Positions 3,812 to 55,282 of a DNA stretch of 64,000 nucleotides are shown piece by piece. Every line of letters begins with the position of its first letter. Position 1 is the first letter of the stretch. The position numbers were made by a program, and so were the translations under genes. The notes under the pieces were generated by a model, which ran no database searches, was not told where the DNA came from, and saw only the letters and a list, made by a program, of their open reading frames with translations. This DNA comes from Haliotis rubra. Lineage: Eukaryota. The stretch lies in contig NW_025766059.1 in the NCBI RefSeq assembly GCF_003918875.1, positions 372,001 through 436,000 on the forward strand. Direction: 5' to 3'.

Positions 3812-5097
3812 CTAAAACTGCAGGCTGGTGTACACGTGCTCGTCACCGTCGTTTGTTTTGGTGCGTTCAGAGATGTTTCCCATTTGAGGAGCAGTAGATC
3901 CAGCGGGTGATGGTCGATGGGCGGCTTGTCCTTGCAATGATGGGTGGGCTGGTCCTGGTGGGTGGGCTGGTTCTAGTCCTGGGGGCTGGTCTGGTCCTGG
4001 TGGATGTGCTGGTGATTGCATTGGTGGATAGGCTTGTCCCTGCATTGGTGGATGTGCTGGTCCTGGTCCTGGTGGATGGCCTGGCCCTGGTTCTGGGGGT
4101 GGCCTGGTCCTATTGGTGGAGAGTAGGGTGGTGGAGGTTGTGCCATTGCAACTGGTGGTTGGATGAATGTTCCAGGAGGAGACTGAATCGTGTGGACATA
4201 TCCAGCATTATATGCACCACTGACCGAATTCGGACCTGGACAAAGACAAAAGGACGTTCTAAGGTTATGCAAGGTTCGACTTTTAGATTGGTCATCATAC
4301 ATCTGTTCGTTGGACTGTTAAGAGAGAAACATGTTAGTGGTCATGATGTACAATATCTGGCCTTTACACTTTCAGTTGCCAAAGCGTCACACAATAACGC
4401 TGGTTGGAATCACCTTTTGCGCTTTTGTTGAACACTGTACATATCAATATTCAAGTAATTATGAATGTTATTAGTACCTGCAGATATAACAGTAAGTTGT
4501 TGCCCGCTCGTCACTACTTGACCTCGATGACCTGGGGATGACTTGCAGCAACAGACGCAGCACACGATTATTCCTACAACTAGGGCGATGAGGAGAGCGA
4601 CGCCAACGACGATGCCGATAATCACACCAACGCTTGAAGAAGAACTCGAGCTGCCGCTATAAACGTTGGGAGAAAACAATGTTATGTAGACAATTTCATG
4701 TTATCTGGTACACCTTGATTCTTATTTTACATAATTATTTTGCTGTTATTGGTTTAAAACTAATGTTACAAGTATCTTTGACTTGTTCAATCCACTACCA
4801 ATGCATTACAGAGCTCAAAGATTCGTGATTGACATTTGTCAGACACGTAAGTATTCCTGAAGATTACCTGAAACAAAGTTGAAGAAAAATATAATCTTTG
4901 TAAGTTTGGTGCAAATAAAATTAATTATGACAGATTGTGGAATGATAATATCAATATGTAAATCCAAATAAACAGTTAATAGCCTTTGTAACCTTTATAC
5001 AGTTAGAAATAGATTGAAACACAGAAACATGTGAGTTCATGGATATAATTTCTTTAATTCTTCAATTTGAACAAATTATATCTGTACCAAGGATCTT

Positions 5098-5163
<66 letters not shown>

Positions 5164-8100
5164 TGTAGCATACACATGCTCATACTCAATAAGAAGAATG
5201 TAAACATGTTGAGGTTTCCTGTGTGTAACGTTTCAAAGCTAGTTTATCAAGCTTTAGGAATGAGAAGCTGACACTGTTGGGAACGCTTCAGTGCGCAGTC
5301 AGTTTTACAGAAGTTATATCTATCACAGTCTACGTCGTCTTTCTCTACATCGCTGAAGAAAAGCTGAGGTCAAAGGCCTTCTAATGTTTGAATAATACAA
5401 ATATGCTCACAAAATACGAAAGCGGTGGAAATTTCCATTCATATGATTTTTTCATAATTTATATCTGGTTTTCCCAAAGCCCAACCACATGAACGTATTA
5501 TTTGACAACGTACTAAAATCTGTTGTGGCATTTTTAGGATAAAACTCAAAATATTACTGCATTTAAAAATGATAACTCAGATTACTGTTTGGTTCTGTGA
5601 ATCTGCAAAATATGACTGCAATGCACTCGGCTTCCTGATACTCACCAGCAATATCTGTAACTGCTAGTTCCACAGCATGAGTATACACATGTCAAGCTCT
5701 TTGTTTGAAAACCGTCATACTCGTAACAATATTCATAGCCAGACGCTGGAAAACACAGACATTGGGAGACGTTAGATATGCTGTAAACATATGCGTTCAC
5801 ACATATAAGGTCCACTGTGTTGAATGCATCAATGAATGGGTTATGTTATTGCTGAACGCCATGCAAATTGCCGAAAATATTGTAGAATGAAAATTGGAGG
5901 CATTGGATAGTATTTACATATGTAGTGAAAGCATGTCGACATTTTGTTAAAAACATTCAGTTATTCAAATGTACTGTGACATATATATTGTGCTTGCAAA
6001 CAATAATAATGTTGTATAGTTTCATAGTGTTATTGGTGTAATACTGCTATCAGATGTTTGTGAAGCGTATGCAATTATGTATAAGAGAACAATAGAACTT
6101 GACGTAGAACACACGCTTGGTGTACCCACTCTACCGTGCTAAGTACATTTCTTGTAAAATCTCATTTTTCCTTCTACAGTATGGTATGCGTTGGACAATG
6201 TCATCGTTAATGAAAAAAATCTATCGCAATTATGCATCTGTATACATGATTAAATGCTTCAGAGAGAAATCGCGAAACGTGTGACTTTTATGAAGTATTA
6301 GAACGCAAATGACAACAAACATTCTAGGCAAGAACCTTTATGTTTGTAAAACATCATATTGTTTGGACGTACTGCTGATTCACTTCTGTTTAACGGACGG
6401 ACGAGTAATCTCTCTGGACCATTGATTCTGCGCATAAAGCTGTGATGATCTTGACGTAAGTTCAATACAGAACAAACTTTATGGATAACAACTTCTAAAG
6501 TTTGTTCTATAGTATACATCCCAACTTCTAAAATGCCACTCAAAGAAGTTTGACGTAAGTTGTTTGTGTATCATCTAGTGACACTGCCTCTTGAACGCGC
6601 GGAGGGTCTCCTGCCTGTAACTATGTTGGAAACTGGGCACAGTCTCATAGTCTCTGAGCAATTCGTTGTTTTCACATTGATTTTCGACTCGCTGTTAGCA
6701 TGCGTAGAGCGTGTAATAATATCCACTGGTCAACTTCCGCTTTGGTCGTATTACTGATAATGTAAACAAACTCTAAATAAAAGCTGTCTGAAGATTATTT
6801 ACGTGTGACAACTGTTCATAGTTGAATACATACATCCACTTGCCCATGCTTTTCAATAATTGATGTCCTGTTTTGGTGGCAACTGCATCAGAGATGTGGT
6901 TTTTTAGTTGTGAGAAGGGGATGTGTAGGAAGGACGGTGGACGGGTGGTGGTGAGATGTGAGCTTGTTAACAAACGTTAAGCTATTTATTTAGCTAATCC
7001 CGGCCCCTTCCATTCATAAATGAATTGAGATCAGTTAAATTCGACGGGTTTTGATTTTGCTTTCTTTAGAGTGTGTTTATACTAAGGTTATCGGAAGTTG
7101 TGGATATATTTTACACGCTCTGCGCATGCAAAATTAATGTGAAACCAACGAATGGGACAGCACCAAAAACCCCAAAATATGACACATAACCAGTGAGCCT
7201 GCAACTTTTGATTTTGTGTAGCTTAATGACGATTTGTCGTGAGCAGTCGCGAGGGTCTGCTTTCAGATCAATCGATCTGCAGTTGTGTTATTTACTATTT
7301 TTTTATTGTTATTTTGTTAGGTCAACGAACAACGTTTTGTCCTGTCAACAAAATTTCACGAGGGAGCGTTCCCATTAGTACCTGGCGCGACTACTGTTAT
7401 GACTGATCTACCCCTCCTGCACACACTGGATATATATGTCTACGGATAATGTCTTGTGGAATAATCTTCCATTCGTCCTGCAAAGTATTAGCCATTTGTG
7501 CAAGTGCTTGGGACTTATTCTGCCTTTGACGCTCACGTTAGTCGAGTTCATCCCACTGGGACACGATCTTGAAATCTTGTAAGCTATGGTAAGACACTGA
7601 CTTTTCAATTATGAAGTAAGCGAACAGTGACAAAATGTGTTGTGTGAGTCGCTATATGGCTGAAATAATGACGATGCGACATTACATTTAAACTCACTCA
7701 CCCTTTCCTCAGCCCAGAAACGTACAGTGCTCCATCGCATTCGCAGATGCAAACACCTCAATACAAGGACAGATTCCGGTGTTCTGGGTCTAATTCCAAC
7801 CTCTCGCAGAGGTTTCCTAATTGTTTGCTCCGATATCCTCCTCGAACCTGACACGTGCCCTGCAGTCTTGGTCGCAGTGGCATGTCGATGACGTAGACGT
7901 AAGGTCCGGTTGATGTTTTCTTGTGTAGGAGTTTTGACTCTTGGTCTACCAGTTCCCGACGCTCTGGGGTCGTCATCTTGAGCTTTAGTTGACTATGCTG
8001 ACCAGTTGGCGCAAAGAACTGCCCAAAGGATTTCTAGGCAGGGGACGCCAAGAAGATCTTCCCGGCCGTGGGCCTGCCATAAATGAGATATGGTACACTG

Positions 8101-11100
8101 GCTTACGTTGAAATGATGTGCAGACTGGTACTATCCAGCTTCAAAGCGTCCTCTGGCGATGTTACGATTGGCAGCGTTCAGTTTCTTCACTTTTCCCACT
8201 TCCAGTAAGTCGACAAACATTTGACAAAATGTAGACAGACATTATACTGCACTTGATTCACGTACACTCTGCATTTATATTTTCCATGACATTTCCGTGC
8301 ATTCTTATTCAAATTGCTGTATAAAGCCACACACGTTTCAGACGGTTGACTTTACGCAATACAATAAGAGTGGCACTATTTGTATTCATATCTTCCTTAA
8401 GTGGCATTTTAGAAGTTGGAAGTCATCTATGGATGACAACTTCTTTATTTCTTGAGCACGACGTTTCAAGTATGAAAACGATACAAGAACCTGTATCAAA
8501 ACGTCGTGCTCTAGAATTAAAGAAGGTGCCATCCCCACATGTTCACAATGTGTGAAGCCCATTTCTTGTGCCCCCCTCAGTGATATTGCTGGAATATTGC
8601 TAAAGGCGGCGTAAAACCAAACTCACTCACTCACTCACTCAAACAACATCAAAGAATACACGGCACGGTACATTGCAGCTGTAACACTAATATTCAGTAT
8701 TTACATGTTTGATATTTAAGTCAAACACAGTATAGGTTTTCTGTTTGACACTGGCTTCATATTCAGCTTAATCCTGACCAAGATTGTACACATAGAAACG
8801 TTATAATTGAGCAGTATTAATGCTGGGCCATACCGTCGTTGAACGAACGTGACAACACCCAACACGGCAAATAAGGAAAACTGTGACAGATTTATTTGCA
8901 TCAACAAATCACAATAGAAGTGCCTAAGTAATCAATTATAATATTGTTTATTGGCCCAGGTGGACAAACATACATTTAAAAGGTATATCAGGTGTAGGAA
9001 ACTACCTGGATGCACTGTCGAGAGTCGATGTATATAACACGTTAATAACAATTAAATACATGATATTTAGCGGAGATGTTGTTCATAAGACTTCATATAG
9101 CACCCTGTACCTGTATATATTAATCAATGTTCAAGCTGCAAAGTTATACCGCAATGACATTTTCAATGTTATACACAGAAAGATTCACAATAACTGGTTC
9201 CACTTCATTACTGCTATTCCATTATAATGCAAAAGCGTAATAACTGTATATATATATCAATTATGGGTAGTAATTCACAACATATTGTTATCAACGGTAA
9301 CTGACTACGCTAATTAGGATGTCTCTCCAATGGTGTTTGTATACTAAGTAGATATATCTACTACTGTATACAAAGACACGCAAATCTGAGAAAACAATCA
9401 CTTCTTAAATGAGAGATAAATGGAAGCTAGTTGTGATGTTTTCCAAATCTAAAATTCCCAATAGTTCTTTGTTGAGTTGGTTTACAAATCAGTCGGGCGA
9501 TGGGGAATACGTGGTGCTGAAGGTGTTCCTGAGAGGCAAATAGAAGTTGTTTTTTTATTCAGGGGCAAGGAAAAGCCCTGAAACGTTGTGTATACAATAC
9601 AAAGAAGTTAACATGCATACTATTTTGTCTTAAACGTGGTGCTGAAGTTGTGATACTCCTTAAACCTGCATGTACTTATAGTAGAGTTATAGACTCATCC
9701 CAACAACATACGTTCAACATACCAGCTGTATAATACTTTTTTCTCATATAGAGCTCCTCTTTGTGTTTCTCTCAAGGTCTGCTTTAGATGTCTGTTCATA
9801 CATTATGAACGTGCAAATAATGCATATATACTCAGTTGAAATGGGTTCTGTACAGTTTTCTGTCAATAATTGATTCTGGACCAGACAATCCAGTGATTGA
9901 CATGTACATATTCATCAACTAAGTCAGCAGCCTCATCACCCAATCCAGTTAGTCGCAACAGGCGTGGCTTTCTGAAAACCAGTTCAAACGCCGATCTTTC
10001 AAAGGGAGAGTGCAACAGGTTATACTACATACAGCCGCATACCATCACTGTTATATAGGCTGGTAAACATCTGTGTAAACAGCCAGGTGCATCAGGCGTG
10101 ACAGCGGCGTAGTTGACAACATGTCTGGCCTGATCATTCGCAGTGAATGGCCAACGTTACTGGAAACATCTGACTGAAGTGTCAGTGTCAGTGTTAGAAA
10201 GATATGATACGAGTGAGTGAGTGAGTGAGTGAGTGAGAGTGATTTCTGTTATATAGCTGCTATCCTAGTGTGGACAGTATATACATTATATCACAGCATA
10301 CTAAATTAACGTAGGTGAAGATACTGCTTGATGCAGAGTGATCGGTTTGGTGAAAGCGTGGTATGGTATTATTAAGTGAGAGATCTAGAGTTACTTTGGC
10401 TTTACGCCGCTTTCAGAAATAGTCCAGCAATATCAGAAATGGGCTTCACACATTGTACCCATGTGGGGATTCTAACCCAGGTCTTCGGTGTGACGAGCAA
10501 ATGCTTTAACCACAAGGACCACCATCACCCATGTGGTCGTATTGTGAACCCATCATGGGTTCTTGGATGAGAACTCACTATAAGCAAACGATGACACCAC
10601 AAGGGGGGCACAACTCTGTCAACCATGTAACCAGTTAATTGAAATATCTGAATTCTTGAATTTGCAATTTGCAATTTGCAATGAAGTAATATACTTACAA
10701 CTGTATTAGACACAGTGAAACGCGGAAAGCCCGGCGAAACATGCACTACTATCACCGGCGGTCTCTTGTTTCAATCACATGTTTAATCTTTAAGCCCGTA
10801 CTGGTATGTGAGCTTTAGTGAGTTTTTACGCCGTTTTCAGCAATAATCCAGCTATATCACGACGTGTGACACCAGCAATGGGCTTCACACATCGTATCCA
10901 TGTGGGGAACGCTTTTACTACCAGGCTACCCCACCGCCACCCGTACTGGAAGGTTACATCATTGATATGTGACAATACCAAAGTTTGGGTAGTAAGGCCC
11001 GACGAGCATCATATGTGTCCAGGATACATGATTGAGAACTACATAGTAATACACACCTGCCCCCCTCATACAGTACACGGCGGGTAGCCAGGACAACGTG

Positions 11101-11311
11101 ACATGCAATATTTGATCTTCTTCTTTCTAAACTAGTGTCTATGACAGAGATCACAGTGACAGTATGTACTTACGACGCAGTTTGGAGTCACTTTGTGTAA
11201 GTAGACACTGTACACGTAATTACTATTATGACCAGTTGGTTACAAATAGTGTTAATACTTACAAATAGAAGCTAGGCAGAGAAGAATCCACCCAGTTTTC
11301 AGAGACATCAT
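3812..11311 (-). CDS. G1: Shisa-like/CYYR1-type (STMC6) single-pass membrane protein, 4 coding exons, one apparent 1-nt frameshift in the last exon
   Basis: Exons 11311-11263 (MMSLKTGWILLCLASI, gtaagt donor), 5745-5646 (SSGYEYCYEYDGFQTKSLTCVYSCCGTSSYRYCC), 4656-4478 (TM VGVIIGIVVGVALLIALVVGIIVCCVCCC), 4235-3812 (PPPPY...HVYTSLQF*). All introns GT-AG, phases 1/2/1. Adding one base at the G5 run 4095-4099 joins the two Pro-rich frames (about 250 aa). Exon 1 assignment is less certain because intron 1 is 5.5 kb. Confidence 0.8.
5101..5157 (+). repeat. (TG)n microsatellite
   Basis: Direct reading; others at 38198-38234 and 51185-51212. Confidence 0.95.
7690..8060 (-). mobile_element. Tc1 transposase remnant
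   Basis: Fragments RRISEQTIRKPLREVGIRPR and VLRCLHLRMRW similar to the 60868-62241 transposase. Confidence 0.65.
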
Positions 11312-11767
11312 CTTGCTGCAGATCGACAACATTCCGCTACACGGAACAGTGCTTCTGACTTGAAAGCTCGTGTTACTGTTTTTGTAAGGAGACAGTGGAG
11401 CACGACTTGAGCGTGTTACTGTTTTTGTAAGGAGGCAGTGGAGCACGACTTCAGTCTTCAGTCTAAATATACCACCCTAAACGCATGGCTGTCACAATAC
11501 TGAACCAATAACACGTTTATACATCCTCCTTCCTTGGCTAACATTCAGTGCTTAGTCATCTCCCTTGCAGCGTGAGTGTCAGTTTTCCCTATTTTATACA
11601 AGGTAGAATGTGAATCGTGACCATCCTCATCTGAAGGGGCAGTGAATAATCGGGATGCTCGGTTAGCTCTGTCGCTTAAGAGTTGCCTCCCCTGCCTCCC
11701 TGTACCGGAGACTTTTTCCAAAGACGTTAAAATATAGTACTTGTTGGTCCCTGCCTGGCACATACCG

Positions 11768-14673: not shown

Positions 14674-17600
14674 TCATATATCCGTAACTGTGGTAGACCT
14701 TGTTGCAGAAGACGTGGAAGGGGGTCTATGTGTGGATGAATGGGACTGATGAGGAGGGGTGGGGAGACGTTTCATCTCTACTGGAGGCAGGTAATACGGG
14801 TCTGGTGCCGGCGGGGATCGGTAACCTTTATCTGGATAGGTATCCTCGTCTGAAACTAAGCACGTTAGACAGGCGTTATTACATTTATAAAGTCTTTGAA
14901 TAGCATTTAGAAATGATGCACAATAGAAAGAGAGTTTTGTGGATGGAAAATTATTTATTATGAGGAACAACGTTTCTGAGTTTCCTTACTCCTTCATCAG
15001 GTGGACCGCCTCCGTGGTGTAGTGGTTAGAGCGTCCGCCCGGAGAGCGGAAGGTCGCGGGTTCGATCCCCGACCGCGTCATACCAAAAAGACGTTAAAAT
15101 ATGGTACTTGTTGGTCCCTGCCTGGCGCTCGGCATTAATGGGTACAACAAAGACTGGTCGGCTCGGAGTCAGTATAATGTGTCTGAGTGGGGTATTCATG
15201 CTTCACTGCGGCATGGTATCTCAGTGGGCTAGCACTATAAAACCAGCTTAAGTCTGGGCTAGTACAAGCAGGCAGCCGTACATACACATACACACTCATG
15301 CACGTCGTCATATGAGTGAAATAAACCCAATTTCACCTCACCTCACCTCACCTCACCTCACCTCACCTCACCTCACCTTCATCAGGTGAATGAATGGTAT
15401 GAGACAGAAAGCATATATATGTACATGTAAAAGCAACAAAAGTAATAAGACAACAAAGATGCAGGCTAAACAATGGAAGCCAACAGTTAACTGGCGTTGA
15501 TGTGTGATTGGTGATTGTATTTTTTTTTATATATTTACATAGACCATGTACAACAGCTTACGTTGACGTTGAGGTCTTTGACGTTACGAGTGTGTTGACG
15601 TTGAGGTCTTTGACGTTACTAGTGTGTTGACGTTGAAGCCGGTGTTCATTAGCAAACTAGAGTTTATCACAGGGTCAAGCTGTTATAATGTTATTTGGTA
15701 TGTGGTTGGGTAAGGTGAGGTGAGGTGAAATTGGGTTTAACGTCGTGCTTGAGAATATTTCGCTCATATGACGTCGTGCATGCGTGTGTATGTGTATGTG
15801 CGGCTGCTTGTACTAGCCCAGACTGAAGTTGGTTCTATAGTGCTAGCCCACTGAGATACCATGCCGCAGTGAAGCACGAATACACATTATACTGACTCCG
15901 AGCCGACCAGTCCTTGTTTTACCCATTAACGCCGAGCGCTAGGCAGGGACCAACAAGTACCATATTTTAACGACTTTTGGTATGACGCGGTCGGGGATCG
16001 AACCCGCGACCTTCCGCCCCCGGGCGGATGGTTTGGTAAGATTGTAGGTCAAATGCAACAGATAATCATATATTTCTTGCTGTAACAATGACTGTCGGGT
16101 TGAATTAATATCTGAAGTCAAGATTCCAGGTCAGTGTAGGTACGGTGCCTGAGCATCGGTTGTCTGGCATCGGCGGCAAGTGTGACCAGAGTGACGGCTT
16201 TGGACTACCATCATAATATCAACCATCCGGTCATCTAGTCAAAACGCTTATTTACAGACAGCCGTTAAATACCAGGAATACCTGGCTGAGACTTCAAGAA
16301 AATAACGTGATAAATACCTGTTGAGTGATCGTCTTCGTGGCTGTGTGTCGACACTTTTTCATTTTGTCTCCGTGCTTTACGACGTCGGAAGAGACAAAAT
16401 AAGACCACACCCACGATCACAGCAATCACGGCCAAAATCCCCACCACGAGTCCAACAATAAGTCCAGTATCTGCCGTTCTGAAAAGAAGACCAAGACATT
16501 ATCAGTGACATATTGGCAGCTTTATAATACTCACTAATCCGTTTCATTGTCACCCTAGGAGCTTCATCTTATGTTGTGTTGCCAAATACATGTATTGTCT
16601 GAACAGCATATAATGGTGTACTCACAGGCCCTCGTGTCTTTGCGAGGATTAAAGATTTTTTTTTAAATATATAAATATTTGAGACTAAATCTAAAATATA
16701 TACAAGCTGCTAAAAGTCATAGAAAAACGTTTGCACTAAAAAAGAAAATTAAAAAATATATGTCTATACACAATTTAACTGCTATACAGCAACCATTGCC
16801 TTCTAGATAGAACAAGGAATAAGGTTTTGGCAACACTACTAACAACTTCATTATTTGACATTAAAAAACAATATTTCTGTTCTTCGGTAAGATTGAAACA
16901 TTCACCATAGATAGTACAAATATTGTCTGTCAGTCTGTCTGTCTGATAACGTGTCAAAGATTGATAACGTGTCAAGGACGGATAACGTGTCAAATGTCAT
17001 CCCGCCGCAATGTAGCAGTGAGCTTAAATGTTTTTAGAAGGAATTCAGATTTGGAATATGATATATTTCTTGTCAAGAATGGCAATCAACTTAAAATATA
17101 AGCTCAAAAAGGATCTATTCATGTTATAAGATGTATCTTAATCCCGAACTTTACTTACACGGTAACGTGTATGACAGAAGATATTTAGCTAAGCTAAGAG
17201 TGAGTGAGTTTGGTTTTACGCCGCTTTTGGCAATATTCCAGCAATATCACAGCGGGGGACACCAGAAATGAGCTTCACACATTGTACCCATGCGGGGAAT
17301 CGAACCTGGGTCTTCGGCGTGACGAGCGAACGCATTAACCACTGGGCTACCCCACCGCCCCAGCTAAGCTAAGAAATGGGGTGGGAAAAAAGTATTACTG
17401 CTTTAACAGGCAGCCCTCGCTCAAAGAAATGTCATGCTGACATTCTCTATAAAATGTTTTTTTCAAGTTTCACAGCTTGGGTCTGACCCATTTGTTTCTT
17501 GCAGTAACCTATGTGGTATCGATATAATGGTGAAACATGACATACAGACTGAGTTGTGTTTTCTGCCGCTTTTGGCGGTATAGCAGTAATAAACATCAAC

Positions 17601-18614
17601 TGTATAGACCAACCCCCAAAATGAAAATGACAAACATGAAGCACTCGGTCATTCATTATATTGTATACGCTCCTCGCGCATCCAAGACACAGGTACACCT
17701 TGTTCTCATGCGCCTTATCAAGTTCATAAAGACCTTGCATCGTATTCTATTCCTCTACACGCACACGTCAAATCGCATGAAAATTGCTTAACTACATACA
17801 TTTCAGAGCTGTTTAAAAAGCAAAGCGACCTGTCGACAGATGTCCGTTGCTATTTTTAGTGATGAAACGCTAATGTCAATACATTTAGCCATATTTTCCT
17901 GACAATATTACTTTTTGCCTTATGTCTATTTCTTACATTTTATAGTGTATCGTCAATATTAATGCAGAAAAATCGTGTATCGTATCGTCACATGAAAACT
18001 CAAGATACACCGGTGAGCCGATGTTGTTTCACACCTAAGGGACGCAACTCTACATTGGCTTTGTCACCGGTTGACAGCCACCATAAACAAACGTTGTGTG
18101 ACTAATCAAAATATATGAATGGCGTCTCGCCAGTGAAGTACGAGTATAAACCAGTGTGTACTAACCCTGGTTCGCTGCAGCAGTAGGAGGATGTAATACC
18201 ACAACAATTGAATTCGCAGTATCTCTTCGCTGGTTGTCCCATCGGACGCTTTTGTGTAACACATTTCCTGCGCGTATGCTGTAGAGTAAGAATCGGATGA
18301 TAAATACATGTTTAAAATTTAGAAATTGGCGAATCAACAGAAAATTAGACAAAGGGCAGTAGAACATAACTGCGTGTAGTGTTATTGAGTGAGGGATTAA
18401 CATAAAATAATAAATAACGACTATTCCAAGCAGGGAATACCGGCTACAGAATCGCTCCCAAAAACGATGAACGTTTACGCATGAATGATTAGTGTGATCA
18501 AGGTCGAAATCCACATCTATGTTCTGAACATACACCTGAACACGTTAGAATGTAGATGTACTTACATATAGCGATTAAAGGAACAATGACACATCCACCC
18601 TTATAGGAACTCAT
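14674..18614 (-). CDS. G2: STMC6/Shisa-like paralog, 4 coding exons, +1 frameshift in the Cys exon (pseudogene allele or assembly error)
   Basis: Exons 18614-18566 (MSSYKGGCVIVPLIAI), 18278-18166 (SYAQEMCYT/KRPMGQPAKRYCEFNCCGITSSYCCSEPG; 113 bp where 112 is needed), 16478-16318 (TM GLIVGLVVGILAVIAVIVGVVLFCLF, then RRRK), 14849-14674 (DEDTYPDKGYRSPPAPDPYYLPP...DI*). GT-AG introns, phases 1/2/1. Confidence 0.75.
15004..15375 (+). mobile_element. Full-length tRNA-derived SINE (family with CACCT tail), 13-bp TSD
   Basis: A-box GGTGTAGTGG, B-box GGTTCGATCCC, (CACCT)n tail; TSD ccttcatcaggtg at 14991-15003 and 15376-15388. The central part resembles the MetaSINE domain (from memory, unverified). 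Confidence 0.9.
15713..16030 (-). mobile_element. SINE, CACCT-tail family, 5'-truncated
   Basis: Reverse complement of the 15004 copy lacking the A-box. Confidence 0.85.
17199..17361 (-). mobile_element. Short tRNA-derived SINE family (about 160 bp, (actc)n tail)
   Basis: tRNA head with A/B boxes; other copies at about 8533-8640, 10395-10530, 10817-10942, 12467-12640, 30624-30770, 35787-35930, 36115-36240, 39718-39840, 42977-43070, 53758-53870, 53935-54048, 58750-59085. Confidence 0.85.
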
Positions 18615-20069: not shown

Positions 20070-20317
20070 NNNNNNNNNNNNNNNNNNNNNNNNNNNNNNN
20101 NNNNNNNNNNNNNNNNNNNNNNNNNNNNNNNNNNNNNNNNNNNNNNNNNNNNNNNNNNNNNNNNNNNNNNNNNNNNNNNNNNNNNNNNNNNNNNNNNNNN
20201 NNNNNNNNNNNNNNNNNNNNNNNNNNNNNNNNNNNNNNNNNNNNNNNNNNNNNNNNNNNNNNNNNNNNNNNNNNNNNNNNNNNNNNNNNNNNNNNNNNNN
20301 NNNNNNNNNNNNNNNNN
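20070..20317. other. Assembly gap (N)
   Basis: Run of N. Confidence 1.
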
Positions 20318-20525: not shown

Positions 20526-23500
20526 TCAGGCAGTACACAGAGAATCTGTCTGTGGAGGGCACGTTCTTGGTGCTGGTTGACACGATGACTCTGCCGTCGG
20601 TGGGTAGGCTGTTCCAGCCATTACTTCAGCGTATGATGGGGGTGGCTGTGCCATTCCTGGGTAGTAAGCAGGAGGCTGGTCAGGGTAGGCGTGGCTTCTG
20701 TTGAGTGCAGGTGGAGGCGGCAGCGAGCCTAGGTGAAGACAACACAGAAGAAGGACTTATATTGACAGCCATTACATGTGTTATATTGATGTTTTAAGCC
20801 ACACAGCGATATTACAGCAATGTGACGACGGACTGTAAATTGTCAGGTCTAGACATCCGATATTGCAAGCTCTAAATATCCGTATGCATAGTCATTATTT
20901 AAACATGACATTGTCAATGAAACATATTTATAAGAATTACACTCGTTACAACTTCGAAGATCCCTTCAGAAAGTTTAGATGTGGCATGAATAAACTGAAT
21001 GTACCAACCTATAGAAGATCCAGACATGATGATGTCAGTATTGCCATGTGTGCTCAACAGTGTTGAGGATGAGTACCATGTACTATTACTATGCCCTGTT
21101 TATTCTGATTTACGCAGCAGATATATACCCGAACTTTATTATGTAAACCCCAACATACAGAAGTTTGTAAATCTACTTATAATTAATAACCAAAATGCAA
21201 ATGTTAGCTATATTTGTTAACAAACTACATAAGGTTTTATGATGCTTATACCAATGTATTTTTCATGCCAGTGCTCCAAAGAAAATTATGTAAAAAATAT
21301 CATTGTACTTTTGGCCTCATGGCCACTCTACGAAATACATCTGTCTGTCTGTCTGTCGAAACTTCGCTCAAATTACATCGGAGCACTCGTGGTCCCTGCT
21401 TATCAAATCTGTCCAGGAGAAAACATTCCGTTTATCAGGTAACATATATCTTATATGTTTCTATAAAGAGGATTCTACCTGTGGATATGACGGAAGGTCT
21501 GAGGGAGGGGTTGTTTTCATTGTGACGTTGTTTTCTTGACCGGAGACAATAGCAGCAGCGGATAAGTACCATCAAGGTGATCAGCCCAACAGCAGCGACC
21601 CAGCTGTACGACGTCGACGTGATGCTACTGCCGCCGTCGCTGTAGCAGTCGACTTCTTGTCAATTATTGGTATATATTGTGCATAGTTGTAAGTATGTAT
21701 GTGTGTGTGTGCTTGGGTACGTGTGTCTGCGTAGACTTGAGCATAAACATATATGTCAGTGTAAGGATACCTCATGTAAAACATGATGCAGTATTTGACA
21801 TCTGTCATGTACAACATGATGCAGTATATTGACATATCTCATGTACAACATGACGCAGTATATGGACATCTGTCATGTACAACATGATGCAGTATATGGA
21901 CATCTGTCATGTACAACATGCTGCAGTATCTGACACCTGTCATGTACAACATGCTGCAGTATATGGACATCTGTCATGTACAACATGATGCAGTATATGG
22001 ACATCTGTCATGTACAACATGATGCAGTATATGGACATCTGTCATGTACAACATGCTGTAGTATATGACATCTGTCATGTACAACATGCTGCAGTATATG
22101 GACATCTGTCATGTACAACATGCTGCAGTATATGGACATCTGTCATGTACAACATGCTGCAGTATATTGACATCTGTCAGTACAACATGCTGCAGTATAT
22201 GGACATCTGTCATATACAACATGATGCAGTATATGGACATCTGTCATGTACAACATGATGCAGTATATGGACATCTGTCATGTACAACGTGCTGCAGTGT
22301 ATGGACATCTGTCATGTACAACATGCTGCAGTATATGGACATCTGTCATGTACAACGTGCTGTAGTATTTGACACCTGTCATGTACAACATGCTGCAGTA
22401 TATTGACATCTGTCATGTACAACATGATGCAGTATATGGACATCTGTCATGTACAACATGATGCAGTATCATGTACAAACACCTGTCATATACAACATAC
22501 TGCAGTATATGGACATCTGTCATGTACAACATGCTGCAGTATATGGACATCTGTCATGTACAACATGCTGCAGTATATGACATCTGTCATGTACAACATG
22601 ATGCAGTATCATGTACAAACATCTGTCATGTACAACATACTGCAGTATATGGACATCTGTCATGTACAACATGCTGCAGTATATGGACATCTGTCATGTA
22701 CAACATGCTGCAGTATATGACATCTGTCATGTACAACATGATGCAGTATATGGACATCTGTCATGTACAACATGATGCAGTATATGGACATCTATCATGT
22801 ACAACGTGCTGTAGTATTTGACATATGTCATGTACAACATGATGCAGTATATGGACATCTGTCATGTACAACATGATGCAGTATCATGTACAAACACCTG
22901 TCATGTACAACATACTGCAGTATATGGACATCTGTCATGTACAACATGCTGCAGTATATGGACATCTGTCATGTACAACATGCTGCAGTATATGACATCT
23001 GTCATGTACAACATGATGCAGTATCATGTACAAACATCTGTCATGTACAACATACTGCAGTATATGGACATCTGTCATGTACAACATGCTGCAGTATATG
23101 GACATCTGTCATGTACAACATGCTGCAGTATATGACATCTGTCATGTACAACATGCTGCAGTATATGGACATCTGTCACGTACAACATGCTGCAGTATCA
23201 TGTACAAACATCTGTCATGTACAACATGCTGCAATATATGGACATCTGTCATGTACAACATGCTGCAGTATATGGACATCTGTCATGTACAACATGTCAT
23301 GCAGTATGCAGTATATGGACATCTGTCATGTACAACATGATGCAGTATCATGTACAAACACCTGTCATGTACATGTACAACATGCTGCAGTATATGGACA
23401 TCTGTCATGTACAACATGCTGCAGTATATGGACATCTGTCATGTACAACATGCTGCAGTATATGGACATCTGTCATGTACAACATGCTGCAGTATATGGA

Positions 23501-35612: not shown

Positions 35613-38193
35613 CTGCATATGACCCAGCAGATGCCATATTTATCCGTTGGCTATACCCTGCCGAGACATCTACCCATGATATAATTACGTCATTTATGAT
35701 GTTTGTTTTACAATGATGTGTGATGATGTTTATTTTTGATACAATACGGACTGTGGAATATGCAGAAAACGACATCTGTGAGATTGTGAGTGAGTAAGGT
35801 TTTACGCCGCTTTTAGCAATAGTCCATCAACATCACAGCGGGGAACATAAGAAATGGGCTCAACACCTTGTACCCATGTTGGGAATCGAACCAGGGTCTT
35901 CCACGTGACGAACGAACACTTTAACCACAACTCTACCCTATCAGTTATAGGGTAGACTGATGGGAAACTTAACGTCTTACGTATTTTATTTTCTTAATCG
36001 AGATCCAAAGAAGTTTAATATATTTACACATGTTATCTATTGAAAAATCGTTTTTGCGAATGTCAAAAGTTTTTTTAAATCAACCCAACGGCAGACTTTG
36101 CAATAGTGGGAGAGTATGATTTTACACTTCTTTATAACAACACCAGATATCAGCTTTACGCATCGTATCCCTAAAGGGATTCGAACCCGGTTATTCAGCG
36201 TGACGATCGATCGCCTTAATCACCAGGCCACCCCGCTCCCTGGACATTACTATGCGTCTCACAATGTACCATAACGATGTATATCGTCTTAAGTTAGGAA
36301 GATATTCAATGTTACGATTGNNNNNNNNNNNNNNNNNNNNNNNNNNNNNNNNNNNNNNNNNNNNNNNNNNNNNNNNNNNNNNNNNNNNNNNNNNNNNNNN
36401 NNNNNNNNNNNNNNNNNNNNNNNNNNNNNNNNNNNNNNNNNNNNNNNNNNNNNNNNNNNNNNNNNNNNNNNNNNNNNNNNNNNNNNNNNNNNNNNNNNNN
36501 AAATATTGATACGTCTACAAAGAGGCCACATTACTTGTTGATACGACAGCAAGCTGATTGGTGGTCATTAAGCGGCCATGCTGTGCCTGTCTCCTTCTAC
36601 AGCAGCAGATGCATGTCACAATGATGGCAATGAGGCCCACGGTCCCGAACCCGCTTCCTGTGTATATTCCGGTATACGAGTACCTGCAATGGAGATTGAA
36701 CATTCTGTGTGTCACGAGAACATACATAATACGTACGTGTCTCTCCCCGATTATTTACATGCTGGCGAGATGTCACTGGTTAACGACTTAGTGCGGAGAA
36801 AAAACCTAACGACGATGATAATGATAAAATATTATTAAATAATAGTATACGATATAATAGCAACAATATTTTTTACGGTAATAGATTATTAATAGGAATA
36901 ATTTACAAAGTAAATTTGTAGATTGTCCGTATCCAAATGATAGAAATATAAAACACGCCATGTATATGTTTGACTCCTGCCACTTTCTATCTTAAATTTG
37001 TCATACATTTAAAGCAAACTGCCATTGACGGTTGCAGACTCCGTACGACTGTAGTGTATCAGCTTCTCATATCACCACACAACATCGTCTTGTTTCACAC
37101 ATTTTTAATTTCCCCAAGAGAAACAGTAGAGGTACATAGCTGGTTTGAATATGGCCGCCGAATGACGTCACATAGCACTCGGTTACAAGTATACTCATGC
37201 CAATAATGGTTGTCACCCCCCTCCCCACCCTAACCCCAACCCCCTCTCCGATAAAAAAAATTGAAGGGGGTGACAACCATTATTGGCATGAGTATATTTA
37301 TATTCTGTAAGAATTTATCTCTAACCCAGACCGTGCACGTGAATAACATGAATAACCTCAATCCAAAGGTTAACATATCAATACATTACAACGATACCGA
37401 GTTGCACACGCACGTACGCATGCACGTACACACACGCACGTACACACACACACACACAAATACTAAACACAAAAATAACACATATACCAAAAAACATGCA
37501 AACCACACACATACGCACTCAAACTCATACTAATACACATATACATACACACACAAACGGCACACAGAGACACTTACACACTCACACACTCACACAAGCA
37601 CCCACCCATACACACACAAATGCACACACACGTGTGACCTACCGTGTACAGCAGTATCGGCTGTAGCTTGTCCCGCAACACGAGTCGGAGCAGTAGAGTT
37701 GTCTAACGCTGCTACCGTAACTTCTCTTGTAACAGACCTCGTAAGCACATGCTGAATAAAGAAATGTTGATTGTTACCGATGATCATACATAAGGATGGA
37801 GCATGATGCTAAGGAAATACACGTCAAAATGTCAAGCATTTTACATGTTATAACCAATATTTGATTTATATATCATTTTTATTAGATATATCGTTAAAAC
37901 GTATATATTTATATTTCCTTCTTTATGCAAACGTGCACTGGACTATATAACATGCCCGTCGTGATAAAACTATTATTGCTAAAAGCGGCGTAAAACTAAA
38001 CTCACTCACTACATAACATGATAATTGCCGTGGCGTGTGAGGTTAAGCATGTGTTTCTCACTGCGTAACGAATACTGTGGACAAGAGCTCGACCTTCCAC
38101 TCCAGTTGATGATTATGCAATGTCGTGATGTATACGATTAACTGAACGCCACCTCCATGTGAGTAGCTGGGGTCACGCACGTATTGTGAGTGA

Positions 38194-38237
<44 letters not shown>

Positions 38238-40484
38238 AACCACAACAATAACATAATAACAGAGATTTGCTTCTACAGTTAAAGTCCTTCCAAACATATC
38301 CTCACAAATTTGATTTATGATTATTTATTTGCCTATTGAGTAGCAACAGACAAATACGATCACCATTGTTTCTTCGATCTCATAATAGTCAACACGCAAT
38401 TATCCTACTTTGATATATAAATTACTTTGGGTTTTTAAATAATTTCTTTATTTTTGTTGCATTTGTACATAGTTGCACATGTATATAAATTGTCTATATC
38501 AACAAAGGGTGACAAGATGACCAGAATTTAGTAAATTGGTGATTAATAAGATGTCCGTACATTTTTTGCTGTGTATTTCGTGAAGTAATAAAAGCATGTG
38601 AGTTCTTTCTGAATCATTTAAAAAATGTATTGGTTTTTCATGTGTTCTATTTTTTAAAATAAATTGTTTGCATACAATTATTAAAAGATTTATTGGCCCA
38701 AAATTTGGTAGCAGAGAGCAAAGAAGTATATCTTTCTTGTTAAGTTTAATGGATAAATCGGCTTCCTGGTTGACCCATTTTTCAAATTGTGTCCAGATGG
38801 AACTCAAATGGTTGCAATACCAAAACAGATGATATAAATTAACTTAAAAATATTAAAAATGCGATGTTCATAACATTTACAGTCCTACATATACTGTGCA
38901 TCCAACCCACCCCGCCCCACCACATCCCCATCGTGGGGCATTGGTCTGCCCACGGTCGGGAGAGGGCTAGTCGCGTCACACGAGCTGCTAAAGAACTGGC
39001 CTGTCAATGTAAGGTATACCTGTAGGCTAGCGCTATAGAACCAAAATATGTCTGAACTGGAACGAAAAGACAAACACACATATGTAAGACGTAATCGTGA
39101 AGGCGTCATAATCCACCGCACGGCATACGAGCAATGACTTTACGGTATGAATTATATTCTCCTTCAGGTCCTGCAACGCACGAACAAAACAGATGACATA
39201 ATACATTACTAAAATACTTCTGACCGCGATATTAATTCAAACCTGTTCTGGTTTCTTTACTTACGGAGTACATGTGTACATTCCCTCAAACGTATTTTTC
39301 TTGATTATTTGAGGCAACTTTGTCAACTCTGTGACATTTAATTTTGTAATCAACACGATGGGATTCAAAATAAAATTAGATCCTCAATTTCCTTCCGTAA
39401 GAGGAAAAGTGAATCGGATGGCAATCAGTCAATGTCTTTTGGTAGATTGTGTGTCTTCGTTAACCGAGTGAACGTTCCTCATGACATCAATCACTGGATT
39501 GTCTTGTCTAGATTCTCAGTGAAACGTTAAACAAACAAAACATGGGTGGAGAATGAAAGCGTGACCTTGTCAACTTCCTGCTATGCGTCAGATCTCATGA
39601 AAGTGGCAATGACAATACCTCAGTCGGTCAAAAACACAATAGTTTGTACAACTGAAGTATAAGTAACTGGACATGTCGGTGTCAGCTTTCTAACTTCCTT
39701 CTGTCATTGTATGTGAATGAGCGTGGTTCTACGCCAGTCTTAACGATAATTAAGGTATATCACGATGGGTGACACAAAAAATAGGCTTCACACATTGCAC
39801 TCATGTGAGAAAAACGAACCCGGATCTTCCTCGTGACGAGCTGATACTTGAATATGATGTTTGAACAAGTTTCAAATAGTTTCAGGTTTTAGCATTAGGG
39901 ACCGTTCAAAATTTAATTTGATTTTAATGGGGGTCCACCCATTCTGTTCTGGGGTGGTAGGGGAACATAAATTTTGTACACACACATGTACTAGGGGTCA
40001 GCAATTTTGTACATATAAATGTTTAAAAATTATGCTTACAAATTATGGGACGATGGGGGGTCATGACAAGCAGGATGGGTCATTTACTTTGTACATAAAT
40101 TTAGGGGTGGGATGGGGTGATGTATTCACATTGCACATTGCTTCTCCATAAAAATCAGTATCACCCTCACTAGCCACGAATTATGAACGGTCCGTTAGGA
40201 CTAGAAATATGGTCTGGGTCACGGGCAGATATGTACTGTATGTACAAGAAATATTGTTTGGTGTCAGCTTGGGGCAGTGTTGCTTACATTCAGTGAACAG
40301 CCACCTGTCTTCGAGTTTCCAGTCCAGTTACATGATCACAAATGGGGACATGAAGGTACAAGGACCAGCACACGAATCAATGTATCTAGATTCCCTACAG
40401 CATTACAGTTGTGTCTATATACTATGTATACTCACAGGCTGTGATTAATGGTAGAATAATCCACAAAGTCTTCAGCGAAATCAT
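35613..40484 (-). CDS. G4: STMC6/Shisa-like paralog, 3' end unresolved
   Basis: Exons 40484-40436 (MISLKTLWIILPLITA), 37751-37643 (SCAYEVCYKRSYGSSVRQLYCSDSCCGTSYSRYCCT), 36683-36535 (RYSYTGIYTGSGFGTVGLIAIIVTCICCCRRR...VVST) and a probable 45-bp phase-1 exon 35657-35613 (YSQRINMASAGSYA). Terminal exon not identified; an N-gap lies at 36321-36500. Confidence 0.78.
36321..36500. other. Assembly gap (N)
   Basis: Run of N. Confidence 1.
37190..37296. mobile_element. Small foldback MITE (G4 intron 2)
   Basis: 31-bp perfect inverted arms tatactcatgccaataatggttgtcaccccc, TA at both ends. Confidence 0.75.
38410..38840 (-). mobile_element. L1/Tx1 LINE 3' fragment
   Basis: HLFWYC..SSIWTQFEKWV...INLLIIVCKQFI, similar to the ORF at 33434-34021. 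Confidence 0.65.
39898..40194. mobile_element. PIF/Harbinger-like MITE (G4 intron 1)
   Basis: TIRs gggaccgttcaaaatt / aattatgaacggtccg flanked by a TTA duplication (39895-39897, 40195-40197). Confidence 0.65.
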
Positions 40485-50344: not shown

Positions 50345-50590
50345 TGAGTGAGTAAGTGAGTTTAGTTCTACGCCGCACTCAGCAATAGTCCATATGGCGG
50401 CGGACTGTAGATAATCGAGTCTGGACCAGACAATCCAGTGATCAACAGCATGAACATCGATCTACGCAAATGGGAACCGATGACATGTGTCAACCAAGTT
50501 AGCAAGCCTGACCACCCGATCCCATTAGTCGCCTCTTACGACAAGGAGCTGACGGTTACTGAAGATCAATTCTAACCCGGATCTTCCCGC
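50345..50590 (-). mobile_element. Long SINE family copy
   Basis: Reverse complement similar to 42493-42727. Confidence 0.82.
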
Positions 50591-52039: not shown

Positions 52040-52736
52040 TATATATGTATAGGTAAATTTAAACAGACATGTTACCAGGAGAAAGATTAACTCTTCGACG
52101 TTTTTGATGAGTGCAAGAAACATCTCATACCCAAATCCTAAGGACGATGGGTGGCGGGAACATGGCGTTACGGAGCTCACAATTACTGCTGACTCTGGAA
52201 ATCTGTGTCATTTTTGTGTGAGATGTTTTGAAACGTATCGAGAAAAGAATTTACGCCAGTGAACCACGTCTGTATTCCAAACCCTTCATAAACCCTGTAC
52301 ACGTTTGATAATGGAAGCTCGTCTTTCCAGAGGTCAAGGTGAACGCATGATTCAGGAACAGTATGCAAACAACACAGTAAAGTTCATCGAAAGAGGCCTT
52401 TGACGTAGGGCCTTGTAGAGCGCCCAGTCCAATTCCAAGATTTTGACACATTTACAAGAGATACCTGAAGTATTACAGAGACTACTCTTTGTATAACATA
52501 AAACCCATTTTGCGTGGATAATCGACAATCTTTATTCTCATTCGTTGATGTTTTATCTAATAAACGTATCATCTTTTGGTGTTATATTTTTCATAAAATG
52601 TGCACAGGACATTTAAAAGCCTGCTTTAAAGTCACCCTTGTTACTAAGGCACATTGAAACATATTGACACAAGTCACAAAATACAAGGCTAAAAGGTTGA
52701 CCGAAAATCTTCATGGTTCTCTTTAAGGCAAAATCA

Positions 52737-55282
52737 TTAAGGAATGGTCTCATAGACATGGCTGTCGCTGACGGATGCTGGGTACTCGGATGTAGGACTT
52801 GGGGTCTTCTTCATTGTCGGTGGGTCGACCTGGGGAGGTGAGGCCTTCCTGGAGTTAGGGACGTAGGCTGGTGCCGTGGGCTTTATGGAGACTATTTGTG
52901 TTGGTGGCGAGTAGGGTGGGGGAGGGTAACTTAGTCCCGCCGGTGGGGCGCCACCTGGGTGTGGCTGAGCAGGGTAACCGTACCCAGGGTTAAAGGCCGG
53001 TTTCGGAGTACCTGGATCAAATAAATTACATAGTAGATCAGAAAACAACCAATTAACCAGGCATATTAGGTTCTGAAATACTCTAATGAAACCGCCAATG
53101 AATCCGCTAGTGAATCCGTTAAAGCTATCAAGTTCTGTTCACAACTGAACTTTAACATATTTTTATTTAAGCCAGAGCCACGTTCCACTCCAAAACTCGT
53201 AAGCTTTTCGCCCAGAGACCCGTCCCACAGAGCCTTTTAAGTTCTAAGACGATCGAAAGCCTAAATATAGGCCACCGCCACCGCCACCGTCACCGTCACC
53301 GTCACCGTCAACGCACTCAGCAATATTCCAGCTGTATGATGGCGGTCTGTAAATACTCGTGTCTGGACCAGACAATCCAGTGATCAACATCCTGAGAATC
53401 GATCTACGCAGTTGGGATACGATGACATGTGTCAGCCAAGTAAGCAAGCCTGACCACCCGATCCCGTTAGTCGCCTCTTATGACAAGGTTGGGTTGCTGA
53501 AGACCAATTCTAACCTCGGTGCCAAAGAACAAAGGTTTCAGTAAGTGCTGTTTGTACCTGATGGTTTGACAGCTCGTTTGTTTGTCTTCACAGCTCGGCC
53601 TTGTTCTCTTCTCGAAGACTTCCGGCAACACACGCAGTACAGAGTGATTCCGACGATAATTCCGATGAGAGCGACGACCCCAACGGCGATGCCAGCAACC
53701 GCGGGAGTCGACAAACCAGACGTGGTAGCGCTGAAATGTGAAACGTTGATAATGCAAGGGGCCATGGGTAACTTGGTGGTTAGAGCGTTCGCTGAAGACT
53801 AGGTTCAATTTTCCTCATGGGCACACTGTGTGGAGCCAAATATTCCACCAATATTACTAAAATGGCCACAAAACACGAGTGGTCCTGTTATTTCAGGCAT
53901 TCCCCCAATATTCGCAGCCCATAGGGTCAATGAGTATTCCAGCAACATCTGAAACGGGTTTCACATTTTGTACCCATCTGTGGAATCGAATCCGGGTCTT
54001 CGGCGCGACGAGCGAACGATTTAACCACTCCACTGCCTCACCGCTCCCATATGCGTTTTAGAATCTTATGATCGTTAAGGATATAATCACTGTTGCCATG
54101 TTGTCTCGTGGTCATCGTCGACGACCGCCATCACTGAGAGACTTTCCCCCAATGAAACGACGTGGCATAAGCTAAGACTGCCAAGCGTGGCTTCAGATCA
54201 AACACACTCACTATTTTCATTTTCAAATGTATCGTGCCATAATTAGTTCAAGTTGTCAGAGTTCAAATAATTCGGATTCACTATGTAGTCATCATTCTTT
54301 AGTAACACATCAAATGTCATGACAAAATATACCATGCTTCTCAGAGTCAACGCCATTACAGTGATTGCAGGTATGTCGCTCTAATTCCATGTTTACTTTT
54401 CAACCTGGAACCTGGATAATTGTTGATTCGTCATGGTTCGAGACAACACTAACCATGTAGACGTCAGCCAGTACAGACACCTGACATGCTTGACATACAG
54501 CCAACACCTTGCCGGTGTTCAATGTAGTCATCTCATATTTTTCCATACCAGCCAATAGTTCGTTTGATTCTACACTGACTGTTTTACCGAGAATGCCAAT
54601 GTTAGAATGCATGGTCGTTTACGCCAAAGTCGCATTACACTTATTTGATGGTATGTGTTCATACCTAAATTGATAAGACCTTTTGTGTTCAGCGTCTCTG
54701 ATGGTGTAAGGGCATACCGTCATCATCGTAACCATCTGATTTGACCAGCATGGACGCCTGGTGCTGTTTGTTTTTAACTCACCTTGTAGAGCAACAATAC
54801 CGCGAGTCAATGTTCCCACAGCATCGGTCAGCACATGTCAGTTTCTTCTCTGGTCCATTGTCGGGTCTGCCCCCAGGGCTTGCACCTGACCGTTTCTGTC
54901 GCATGTAGCATTCTTCATATGCCAATGCTGAATAAGATGAACCGTGCACTTACTTAATGGTGTCAGCCATACAATTTACATAAATAACATAATCTAAACA
55001 AGAAAGACTGTAACTACAGAACACACACATAGAATGAGTTGAACCATATATTTTAGCTTGTAAGGAACATCATACTGAACAAAATTAATCAGTCTCTCTT
55101 TCTCCGCACACAAAGTAAACACTTTAAAGAAGGTTATCTATCACCTCTATAATATAATCAAAATCATGGTTATTTTTGTACACTATTTTGTATAAATCTG
55201 TCTACACAGATGGTATGTAACTATGCTACTCACACACTGTGATCAGGACAGAGAGGATGAAGGCATCATGCAAGGAGACCAT
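52737..55282 (-). CDS. G5: intact STMC6/Shisa-like paralog, 213 aa, PPPY motif and C-terminal HVYETI
   Basis: Exons 55282-55234 (MVSLHDAFILSVLITV), 54927-54783 (SLAYEECYMRQKRSG...KKLTCADRCCGNIDSRYCCST), 53730-53558 (TM AVAGIAVGVVALIGIIVGITLYCVCC), 53011-52737 (GTPKPAFNPGYGY...YPPPPYSPP...SHVYETIP*). Total 642 nt, open, GT-AG, phases 1/2/1. Confidence 0.87.
53310..53516 (-). mobile_element. Long SINE family copy (G5 intron 3)
   Basis: Reverse complement similar to 42493-42727. Confidence 0.82.

What the first reader, a model, noticed from the sequence alone, without database searches (positions are those of the whole stretch)
3812..55282. Hidden tandem array of five strongly diverged six-cysteine single-pass membrane adaptors (Shisa-like/CYYR1/WBP1-type)
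Seen in sequence: five same-strand genes share one blueprint. Each has an exactly 49-bp signal-peptide exon, a phase-1/2 Cys exon with C-x(9-24)-C-x3-CC-x(6-7)-CC, a phase-2/1 TM exon and a phase-1 tail exon (unresolved in G4). Outside the cysteines, CY and CCG, the proteins share little identity. Established: this cysteine pattern with a TM segment, juxtamembrane Cys cluster and PPxY motifs defines the STMC6 Shisa-like superfamily, adaptors that recruit WW-domain Nedd4-family E3 ligases. Inference: a lineage-specific expanded and diversified cluster, possibly a recognition or receptor-degradation system in a mollusc. Most exons are invisible in the ORF track.
Basis: partly seen in the sequence, partly recalled or inferred. 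Interest (0 to 1): 0.82.

Follow-up and report, generated by a model that had tools for sequence, protein, structure and literature searches.

The report
Abalone CYYR1/Shisa-like membrane adaptor gene array
The window from the blacklip abalone genome holds a real tandem row of small four-exon genes for CYYR1/Shisa-like single-pass membrane proteins, but most of them are already in the public annotation, they have one-to-one counterparts in another abalone, and one (perhaps two) copies are broken, so it is a solid but fairly ordinary gene-family expansion.

Summary
Five minus-strand paralogs, plus the first exon of a sixth at 747-699, share one plan. It has a 49-bp first coding exon, a Cys exon (C-x9-24-C-x3-CC-x6-7-CC), a TM exon with a juxtamembrane Cys cluster, and a Pro-rich tail exon. 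All 14 introns are GT-AG.

Corrections:
- Gene D's Cys exon is 113 bp and out of frame. It carries a 1-bp insertion relative to Haliotis asinina.
- Gene E's tail changes frame near 4089-4111.
- Gene B's tail is absent from the readable sequence, and a gap starts 35 bp after its TM exon.
- No gap cuts an exon.

The genome is Haliotis rubra. RefSeq already models A (CYYR1-like), B (truncated), C and E (shisa-5-like), so the array is not hidden.

Pfam CYYR1 passes its cut-off for A (33.2 bits) and E (32.7 bits). Shisa_N and WBP-1 sit at or below their cut-offs.

The family has at least 13 Cys exons in this genome. H. asinina carries A to E in the same order. Orthologue pairs group together on a tree, with dN/dS of 0.16-0.66. 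The duplications are therefore old and the genes are constrained. Rapid diversification is not supported.

The likely function is a PPxY adaptor for WW-domain HECT E3 ligases, as for human CYYR1. This is inferred, not shown. The scan's notes hold no earlier record of this family.

The parts
52737..55282 (-). Exons: 55282-55234 (49 bp), 54927-54783 (Cys, 145 bp), 53730-53558 (TM, 173 bp), 53011-52737 (tail with stop). It has one PPPPY motif and a C-terminal HVYETIP.
   Evidence: The model is identical to RefSeq 'CYYR1-like' P0016, 213 aa. Pfam CYYR1 scores 33.2 bits, above the 31-bit cut-off.
36535..40484 (-). Gene B (G4). Exons: 40484-40436, 37751-37643 (Cys, 109 bp), 36683-36535 (TM, 149 bp). 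The tail exon was not found.
   Evidence: RefSeq P0002 (108 aa) is truncated after the TM exon. tblastn with the H. asinina orthologue's tail finds no B tail in the readable window.
36321..36500 (.). Assembly gap that starts 35 bp after B's TM-exon donor. It may hide B's tail exon. Not filled.
20526..29407 (-). Gene C (G3). Exons: 29407-29359, 28582-28480 (Cys, 103 bp), 21639-21479 (TM, 161 bp), 20728-20526 (tail, with PPAY and PPSY). The gap at 29077-29225 lies in intron 1.
   Evidence: The model is identical to RefSeq 'shisa-5-like' P0004, 171 aa.
21772..28406 (.). A 34-bp minisatellite of about 6.6 kb that fills intron 2 of gene C. It produces spurious plus-strand ORFs and CC..CC motif hits.
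14674..18614 (-). Gene D (G2), a probable pseudogene. Exons: 18614-18566, 18278-18166 (Cys, 113 bp, frame broken by a 1-bp insertion), 16478-16318 (TM), 14849-14674 (tail, no PPxY).
   Evidence: Alignment to H. asinina shows CAGCGAAG against CAG-GAAG. The XP accession numbers of E, C and B are consecutive, so no protein model sits where D lies between E and C. dN/dS is 0.66.
3812..11332 (-). Gene E (G1). Exons: 11311-11263 (or from the ATG at 11332), 5745-5646 (Cys, 100 bp, last Cys codon split TG|C), 4656-4478 (TM), 4235-3812 (tail). PPPPY is followed by a frame break near 4089-4111. The conserved ending EHVYTSLQF lies in the other frame.
   Evidence: RefSeq P0007 (203 aa) ends in the shifted frame at 3976. 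H. asinina orthologue P0015 (245 aa) keeps the frame through to ...HVYTSLQF. H. rubra has 23 extra nt there.
699..747 (-). The 49-bp first coding exon of a sixth paralog (F). Its Cys, TM and tail exons lie just off the window, at about C1169:371.5, 367.2 and 364.9 kb.
   Evidence: loci L010, L001.
20070..20317 (.). Assembly gap in the C-D intergenic region, 208 bp past C's stop codon. It touches no exon.

Best explanation
This is part of a conserved tandem array of CYYR1-like (STMC6, Shisa-like superfamily) genes in the blacklip abalone Haliotis rubra.

Architecture (shown): each gene has four coding exons. They encode a signal peptide, a small six-cysteine ectodomain, one TM helix with a juxtamembrane Cys cluster, and a disordered Pro-rich cytoplasmic tail.

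Status of the copies (shown): A, B and C look intact as far as they can be read. D carries a frameshift and is probably a pseudogene. E is out of frame in the assembly.

Mechanism (inferred by homology): the tail's PPxY motifs dock WW domains of HECT E3 ligases of the Nedd4/WWP/Itch type at endosomal or plasma membranes. This would regulate the ligase or direct it to membrane cargo. A conserved C-terminal Y-x-x-hydrophobic motif could act as a sorting signal.
For: - Identity of genome and gene models: database proteins on a contig of the same length as C1169 match my exon junctions exactly.
- Family: Pfam CYYR1 is above its cut-off for A and E. Shisa_N scores on the Cys exons and CYYR1 on the TM exons, exon by exon. 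The best CYYR1-profile hits in the whole genome are these genes.
- Gene structure: four small exons, as in human CYYR1 (PMC1863428).
- Reality and constraint: A to E keep the same order in H. asinina. The tree pairs the orthologues. dN/dS is 0.24 for A and 0.16 for B, and 0.24 for the pooled tail exons of A and C.
- Motifs: PPxY is present in A, C, E and F, and in the H. asinina B orthologue.
- Mechanism in relatives: human CYYR1 binds WWP1, WWP2 and ITCH WW domains through PPxY and sits on late endosomes (PMC11399591). WBP1, VOPP1 and TMEM207 bind WWOX through PPxY (PMC6125347).
- Partner: a locus with four WW exons, of the WWP/Itch type, exists in this genome.
Against: - No transcript or protein data were available here.
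- B and C do not reach any Pfam cut-off on their own.
- D lacks PPxY and is frameshifted.
- E's PPxY is followed by a frame break.
- WW binding was not shown.
- The vertebrate CCSYYAY box is not conserved.
- C, D and E show only weak constraint, with dN/dS about 0.6 from small counts.
Confidence: 0.78

Rival explanations
1. They work like Shisa proper rather than CYYR1. The ectodomain would bind and retain, or modulate, specific receptors (Frizzled or FGFR retention, or ion-channel auxiliary subunits), and E3 recruitment would be secondary.
For: Shisa_N is the only Pfam hit on the Cys exons. The CCG-x5-RYCC core is Shisa-like. RefSeq names some copies shisa-4/5-like. A mussel atlas found Shisa-domain genes over-represented in gills and speculated about a role in receptor trafficking (PMC5549309).
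Against: Shisa_N scores sit at or below the cut-off. Full-length A and E pass the CYYR1 cut-off instead. The ectodomain is only about 35-50 residues. A separate, much better Shisa_N exon exists elsewhere in the genome, at 40.7 bits.
Confidence: 0.1
2. A rapidly diversifying, lineage-specific recognition or immune family.
For: Paralogs differ strongly outside the cysteines. There are many copies, in several clusters. dN/dS is about 0.6 for C and E. Few recognisable relatives exist outside Haliotis.
Against: One-to-one orthologues in conserved order in H. asinina. Orthologue pairs are strongly supported. The Cys exons pooled give dN/dS 0.28, and no gene exceeds 1. A homologue with the same architecture exists in a scallop (P0022).
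Confidence: 0.07
3. A decaying array whose copies are mostly non-functional relics.
For: D is frameshifted here and its H. asinina copy has lost the AG acceptor. E and the paralog at 274 kb have frame breaks in their tails. B's tail is missing.
Against: A, B and C have intact frames, GT-AG introns and dN/dS below 1. E's downstream frame stays open for 96 codons and ends in the conserved motif. That fits a one-base error in a run of C in the assembly better than decay.
Confidence: 0.05

Closest known systems
[quoted passage not shown]
   Same: Four small coding exons. Signal peptide, a small Cys-rich ectodomain with the C-x3-CC...CC pattern, one TM helix with flanking cysteines, and a PPxY tail. 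A and E pass the Pfam cut-off (PMC1863428; PMC11399591).
   Different: CYYR1 is described as a single locus in human (PMC1863428), against at least 13 Cys exons here, in tandem arrays. Each protein has one or two PPxY motifs instead of three. There is no CCSYYAY box. Tails are longer, and several copies end in a conserved HVY-x-x-L/I motif.
Shisa family (Pfam Shisa_N, PF13908)
   Same: The CCG...RYCC core. Single-pass type I topology. Pro-rich tail. Marginal Shisa_N hits on the Cys exons.
   Different: Scores lie at or below the cut-off and the ectodomain is much shorter. A better Shisa_N exon lies elsewhere in this genome.
WBP1 / WBP1L / VOPP1 (Pfam WBP-1, PF11669)
   Same: STMC6 architecture and PPxY tails that bind WW proteins (PMC6125347, PMC6991692). 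There are sub-threshold WBP-1 hits for C and for the B orthologue.
   Different: Scores of 18.6-25.9 bits fall below the 28.1-bit cut-off, so these are not members by profile.
NDFIP and ARRDC PPxY adaptors
   Same: The proposed mode of action is the same: a membrane-bound PPxY protein recruits Nedd4-family E3 ligases (PMC11399591).
   Different: Unrelated folds and topologies. This is an analogy only.

Membership tests
STMC6 (single-TM proteins with six conserved cysteines) | Six conserved ectodomain cysteines in the pattern C*C*CC*CC | tested here: met
   The pattern C-x9-24-C-x3-CC-x6-7-CC is present in A, B, C and E. In E the last Cys codon is split across the intron. In D it appears only if two frames are combined.
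STMC6 (single-TM proteins with six conserved cysteines) | N-terminal signal peptide and a single TM helix | tested here: met
   A hydrophobic 16-residue first exon in all six genes. One Kyte-Doolittle TM segment per gene. No dedicated signal-peptide predictor was run.
STMC6 (single-TM proteins with six conserved cysteines) | Pro-rich C-terminal tail with PPxY motifs | tested here: met
   A has PPPPY, C has PPAY and PPSY, E has PPPPY, F has PPSY. D has none. B's tail is unread, but its H. asinina orthologue has PPPPY.
CYYR1 (Pfam PF10873) | Whole-protein score at or above the 31-bit gathering cut-off | tested here: met
   A scores 33.2 bits and E scores 32.7 bits. The 274-kb paralog scores 48.9 bits. 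The truncated B and C do not reach the cut-off.
CYYR1 (Pfam PF10873) | Four small coding exons | tested here: met
   compared with PMC1863428 for the human gene.
CYYR1 (Pfam PF10873) | CCSYYAY box and three PPPY repeats (PMC1863428) | tested here: not met
   After the last CC come Ser/Thr-rich stretches. Only B has a Tyr-rich CC-TRYSYTGIY. Each protein has one or two PPxY motifs.
Shisa (Pfam PF13908 Shisa_N) | Score at or above the 22-bit cut-off | tested here: inconclusive
   Cys exons score 22.1, 21.3, 20.5 and 13.1 bits. Full-length A scores 20.6 bits.
WBP-1 (Pfam PF11669) | Score at or above the 28.1-bit cut-off | tested here: not met
   C scores 18.6 bits and the H. asinina B orthologue scores 25.9 bits.
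Functional class: WW-domain E3 ligase adaptor | PPxY-dependent binding to Nedd4-family WW domains | not testable with these tools
   Needs a binding assay. The one computational attempt is listed under Tried and rejected.

The most novel reading that the evidence does not exclude
Abalones, and perhaps vetigastropods more widely, have turned the single-copy CYYR1-type E3-ligase adaptor into a stable battery of a dozen or more paralogs. Their ectodomains differ strongly while the PPxY and sorting motifs are kept. Each paralog would then steer WWP/Itch-type ligases to a different membrane cargo or tissue.
Probability: 0.15. Interest if true: 0.45.

Novelty: new member of a known kind. Interest (0 to 1): 0.27.

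Why it matters
It documents that an invertebrate can carry a conserved multi-gene array of CYYR1-like adaptors. In vertebrates the family is described as a single gene, and its function was assigned only in 2024. That gives a natural set of ectodomain variants for asking what the tiny six-cysteine domain does. On the practical side, it flags annotation problems in the H. rubra assembly: a truncated B, a frame-shifted E, and an unannotated broken D.

Tried and rejected
- **Complex prediction.** I paired a single-exon WW domain from the genome's WWP/Itch-like locus (L026:5893-6012) with the PPPPY part of A's tail. The result was no verdict, score 0.06. It is no evidence either way.
- **Pfam on the tail exons alone.** No hits.
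- **Pfam Shisa_N against the whole genome.** It found only one unrelated, stronger exon. The family's own exons score too low for a 1.4-Gb search, so I used a profile of the family instead.
- **DNA search for a second copy or haplotig of D.** Only the window copy was found.
- **Pei and Grishin 2012.** Not held in the library. Its definitions are cited through PMC6125347 and PMC11399591.
- **A bacterial-type promoter scan.** Irrelevant for a eukaryote and ignored.
- **Plus-strand CC..CC hits at 22-28 kb.** These are minisatellite artefacts.
- **Joined spliced proteins.** I did not type or join exon translations for any search. Exons went in by reference. Full-length proteins were used only when a search returned them as database entries.
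Full report
**What is in the sequence**

All the genes lie on the minus strand. A six-frame motif scan found five exons with C-x3-CC-x6-7-C(C). They sit at about 54.8, 37.7, 28.5, 18.2 and 5.7 kb. The core motif occurs 5 times, against 0.015 expected in Markov simulations. Plus-strand hits at 22-28 kb are artefacts of a 34-bp minisatellite.

Each Cys exon has an AG acceptor in phase 1 and a GT donor in phase 2. Upstream of each lies an ATG-to-GT exon of exactly 49 bp that encodes a hydrophobic 16-mer of the M-x-S-L-K type. A sixth such exon lies at 747-699.

Downstream of each Cys exon lies a TM exon in phase 2/1, with a juxtamembrane Cys cluster. A, C, D and E also have a phase-1 Pro-rich tail exon. 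All 14 introns are GT-AG.

**Corrections to the observation**

- **Gene D.** Its Cys exon is 113 bp, so the conserved AY..CY start and the CCG..CC core fall in different frames. Aligned to the H. asinina copy, H. rubra has one extra base, and it is not in a homopolymer. The H. asinina copy has an intact frame but GG in place of the AG acceptor. D also lacks PPxY and has no RefSeq protein model. It is probably a pseudogene.
- **Gene E.** Its tail has PPPPY in one frame. The conserved ending ...EHVYTSLQF, with its stop at 3812, is in another frame. Relative to H. asinina, H. rubra has 23 extra bases beside a run of five C. A 24-base in-frame insertion with one C missing from the assembly would explain why the downstream 96 codons stay open. 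That is inference.
- **Gene E start.** E also has an in-frame ATG 21 nt upstream, conserved in H. asinina.
- **Gene B.** Its tail is not in the readable sequence.

**Gaps**

The gap at 36321-36500 begins 35 bp after B's TM donor. The gap at 29077-29225 lies in C's intron 1. The gap at 20070-20317 lies past C's stop. No exon crosses a gap, and I did not fill or look up any gap.

**Identity**

I searched the exons one by one by reference and did not join them.

- Pfam Shisa_N scores 22.1, 21.3, 20.5 and 13.1 bits on the Cys exons of A, B, C and E (cut-off 22).
- Pfam CYYR1 scores 25.2 and 19.4 bits on the TM exons of A and E.
- A profile of 13 Cys exons, run against 1.84 billion representative proteins, found only ten clusters.

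Several of those hits are RefSeq proteins of Haliotis rubra on a contig of 1,566,203 bp, the same length as the window's contig. They reproduce my junctions exactly:

| Gene | Protein id | Length | RefSeq name |
|---|---|---|---|
| A | P0016 | 213 aa | CYYR1-like |
| B | P0002 | 108 aa | uncharacterized (truncated) |
| C | P0004 | 171 aa | shisa-5-like |
| E | P0007 | 203 aa | shisa-5-like (ends in the shifted frame) |

Full-length A and E pass the CYYR1 cut-off, at 33.2 and 32.7 bits against 31. B and C belong through their clear paralogy. The best CYYR1-profile hits in the whole genome are these genes. Human CYYR1 also has four small exons, a TM domain and PPPY repeats (PMC1863428).

**Size and age of the family**

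A family profile finds at least 13 Cys exons in the genome:

- eight on this contig: the five here, F at 371.5 kb, and others at 274 and 219 kb;
- three near-identical copies on C2569;
- one on C780;
- others on C2070.

The 49-bp first exon recurs in the paralogs outside the window.

H. asinina chromosome CM074527.1 carries orthologues of A, B, C and D in the same order and orientation within 22 kb. E lies further along the same chromosome. A maximum-likelihood tree pairs the orthologues with strong support, so the duplications predate the species split.

Nei-Gojobori dN/dS, computed exon by exon:

| Gene or exon class | dN/dS |
|---|---|
| A | 0.24 |
| B | 0.16 |
| C | 0.61 |
| D | 0.66 |
| E | 0.63 |
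| Cys exons of A, B, C pooled | 0.28 |
| Tail exons of A, C pooled | 0.24 |

These values rest on small counts.

Outside Haliotis, only weak relatives appeared, in Patella and in Pecten. The Pecten protein has the same architecture.

**Mechanism**

Shown: the architecture, the motifs, and conservation.

Inferred: the PPxY tails recruit WW-domain HECT ligases. Human CYYR1 does this with WWP1, WWP2 and ITCH on late endosomes (PMC11399591). WBP1 and VOPP1 do it with WWOX (PMC6125347). The abalone genome has a four-WW locus of the WWP/Itch type.

The conserved C-terminal Y-x-x-L/I in A, E and the B orthologues may be a sorting signal. That reading rests on my own knowledge of such motifs.

**Verdict**

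The finding is real and well described, but it is already annotated. It is an old, constrained expansion of a known family rather than a hidden, fast-diversifying system. The scan's notes hold no earlier record of this family.

Noticed in passing
window 21772-28406: A 34-bp minisatellite of about 190 copies (6.6 kb) fills intron 2 of gene C. It creates long spurious plus-strand ORFs.
   Followed up: partly
window 40.5-52.7 kb: The spacer between A and B is about 12 kb here but 3.4 kb in H. asinina. The extra DNA is GC-richer. I did not verify that.
   Followed up: no
window about 50403 and 53345; also L002, L004-L007, L015-L017: A dispersed repeat recurs at many loci. One frame reads ...GS.VVKAFARH.EDPGSIPH.GTMCE.H.WCPPP..WNIA. 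It is probably a SINE or transposon fragment, and it produces chance PPxY hits.
   Followed up: no
L002 and L011 (C1169: about 270.7-276.0 kb): The paralog at 274 kb (RefSeq P0003, shisa-4-like) also seems frame-shifted in its Pro-rich tail. Another frame reads the ...PPPYS...SEHY ending that its H. asinina relative P0006 has.
   Followed up: partly
L021:24380-24390 (H. asinina): The H. asinina copy of D has GG where H. rubra has the AG acceptor of the Cys exon. D may therefore be disabled independently in both species.
   Followed up: partly
C2569:8-12 kb, 39-41 kb, 85-92 kb, and C780:224-230 kb (L004, L013-L016): Four near-identical CYYR1-like copies, each with an MYGVQIGCV first exon. They indicate recent segmental duplication or uncollapsed haplotypes.
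   Followed up: partly
L026:4646-6012 (C2589:864.6-866.0 kb): Four WW-domain exons in 1.4 kb, the pattern of a WWP/Itch/Su(dx)-type HECT ligase. This is a candidate partner of the PPxY tails.
   Followed up: partly
window 37380-37640 and 1350-2700: Long (TG)n/(CA)n microsatellites. One lies in intron 2 of gene B. They mimic hydrophobic ORFs in TM scans.
   Followed up: no
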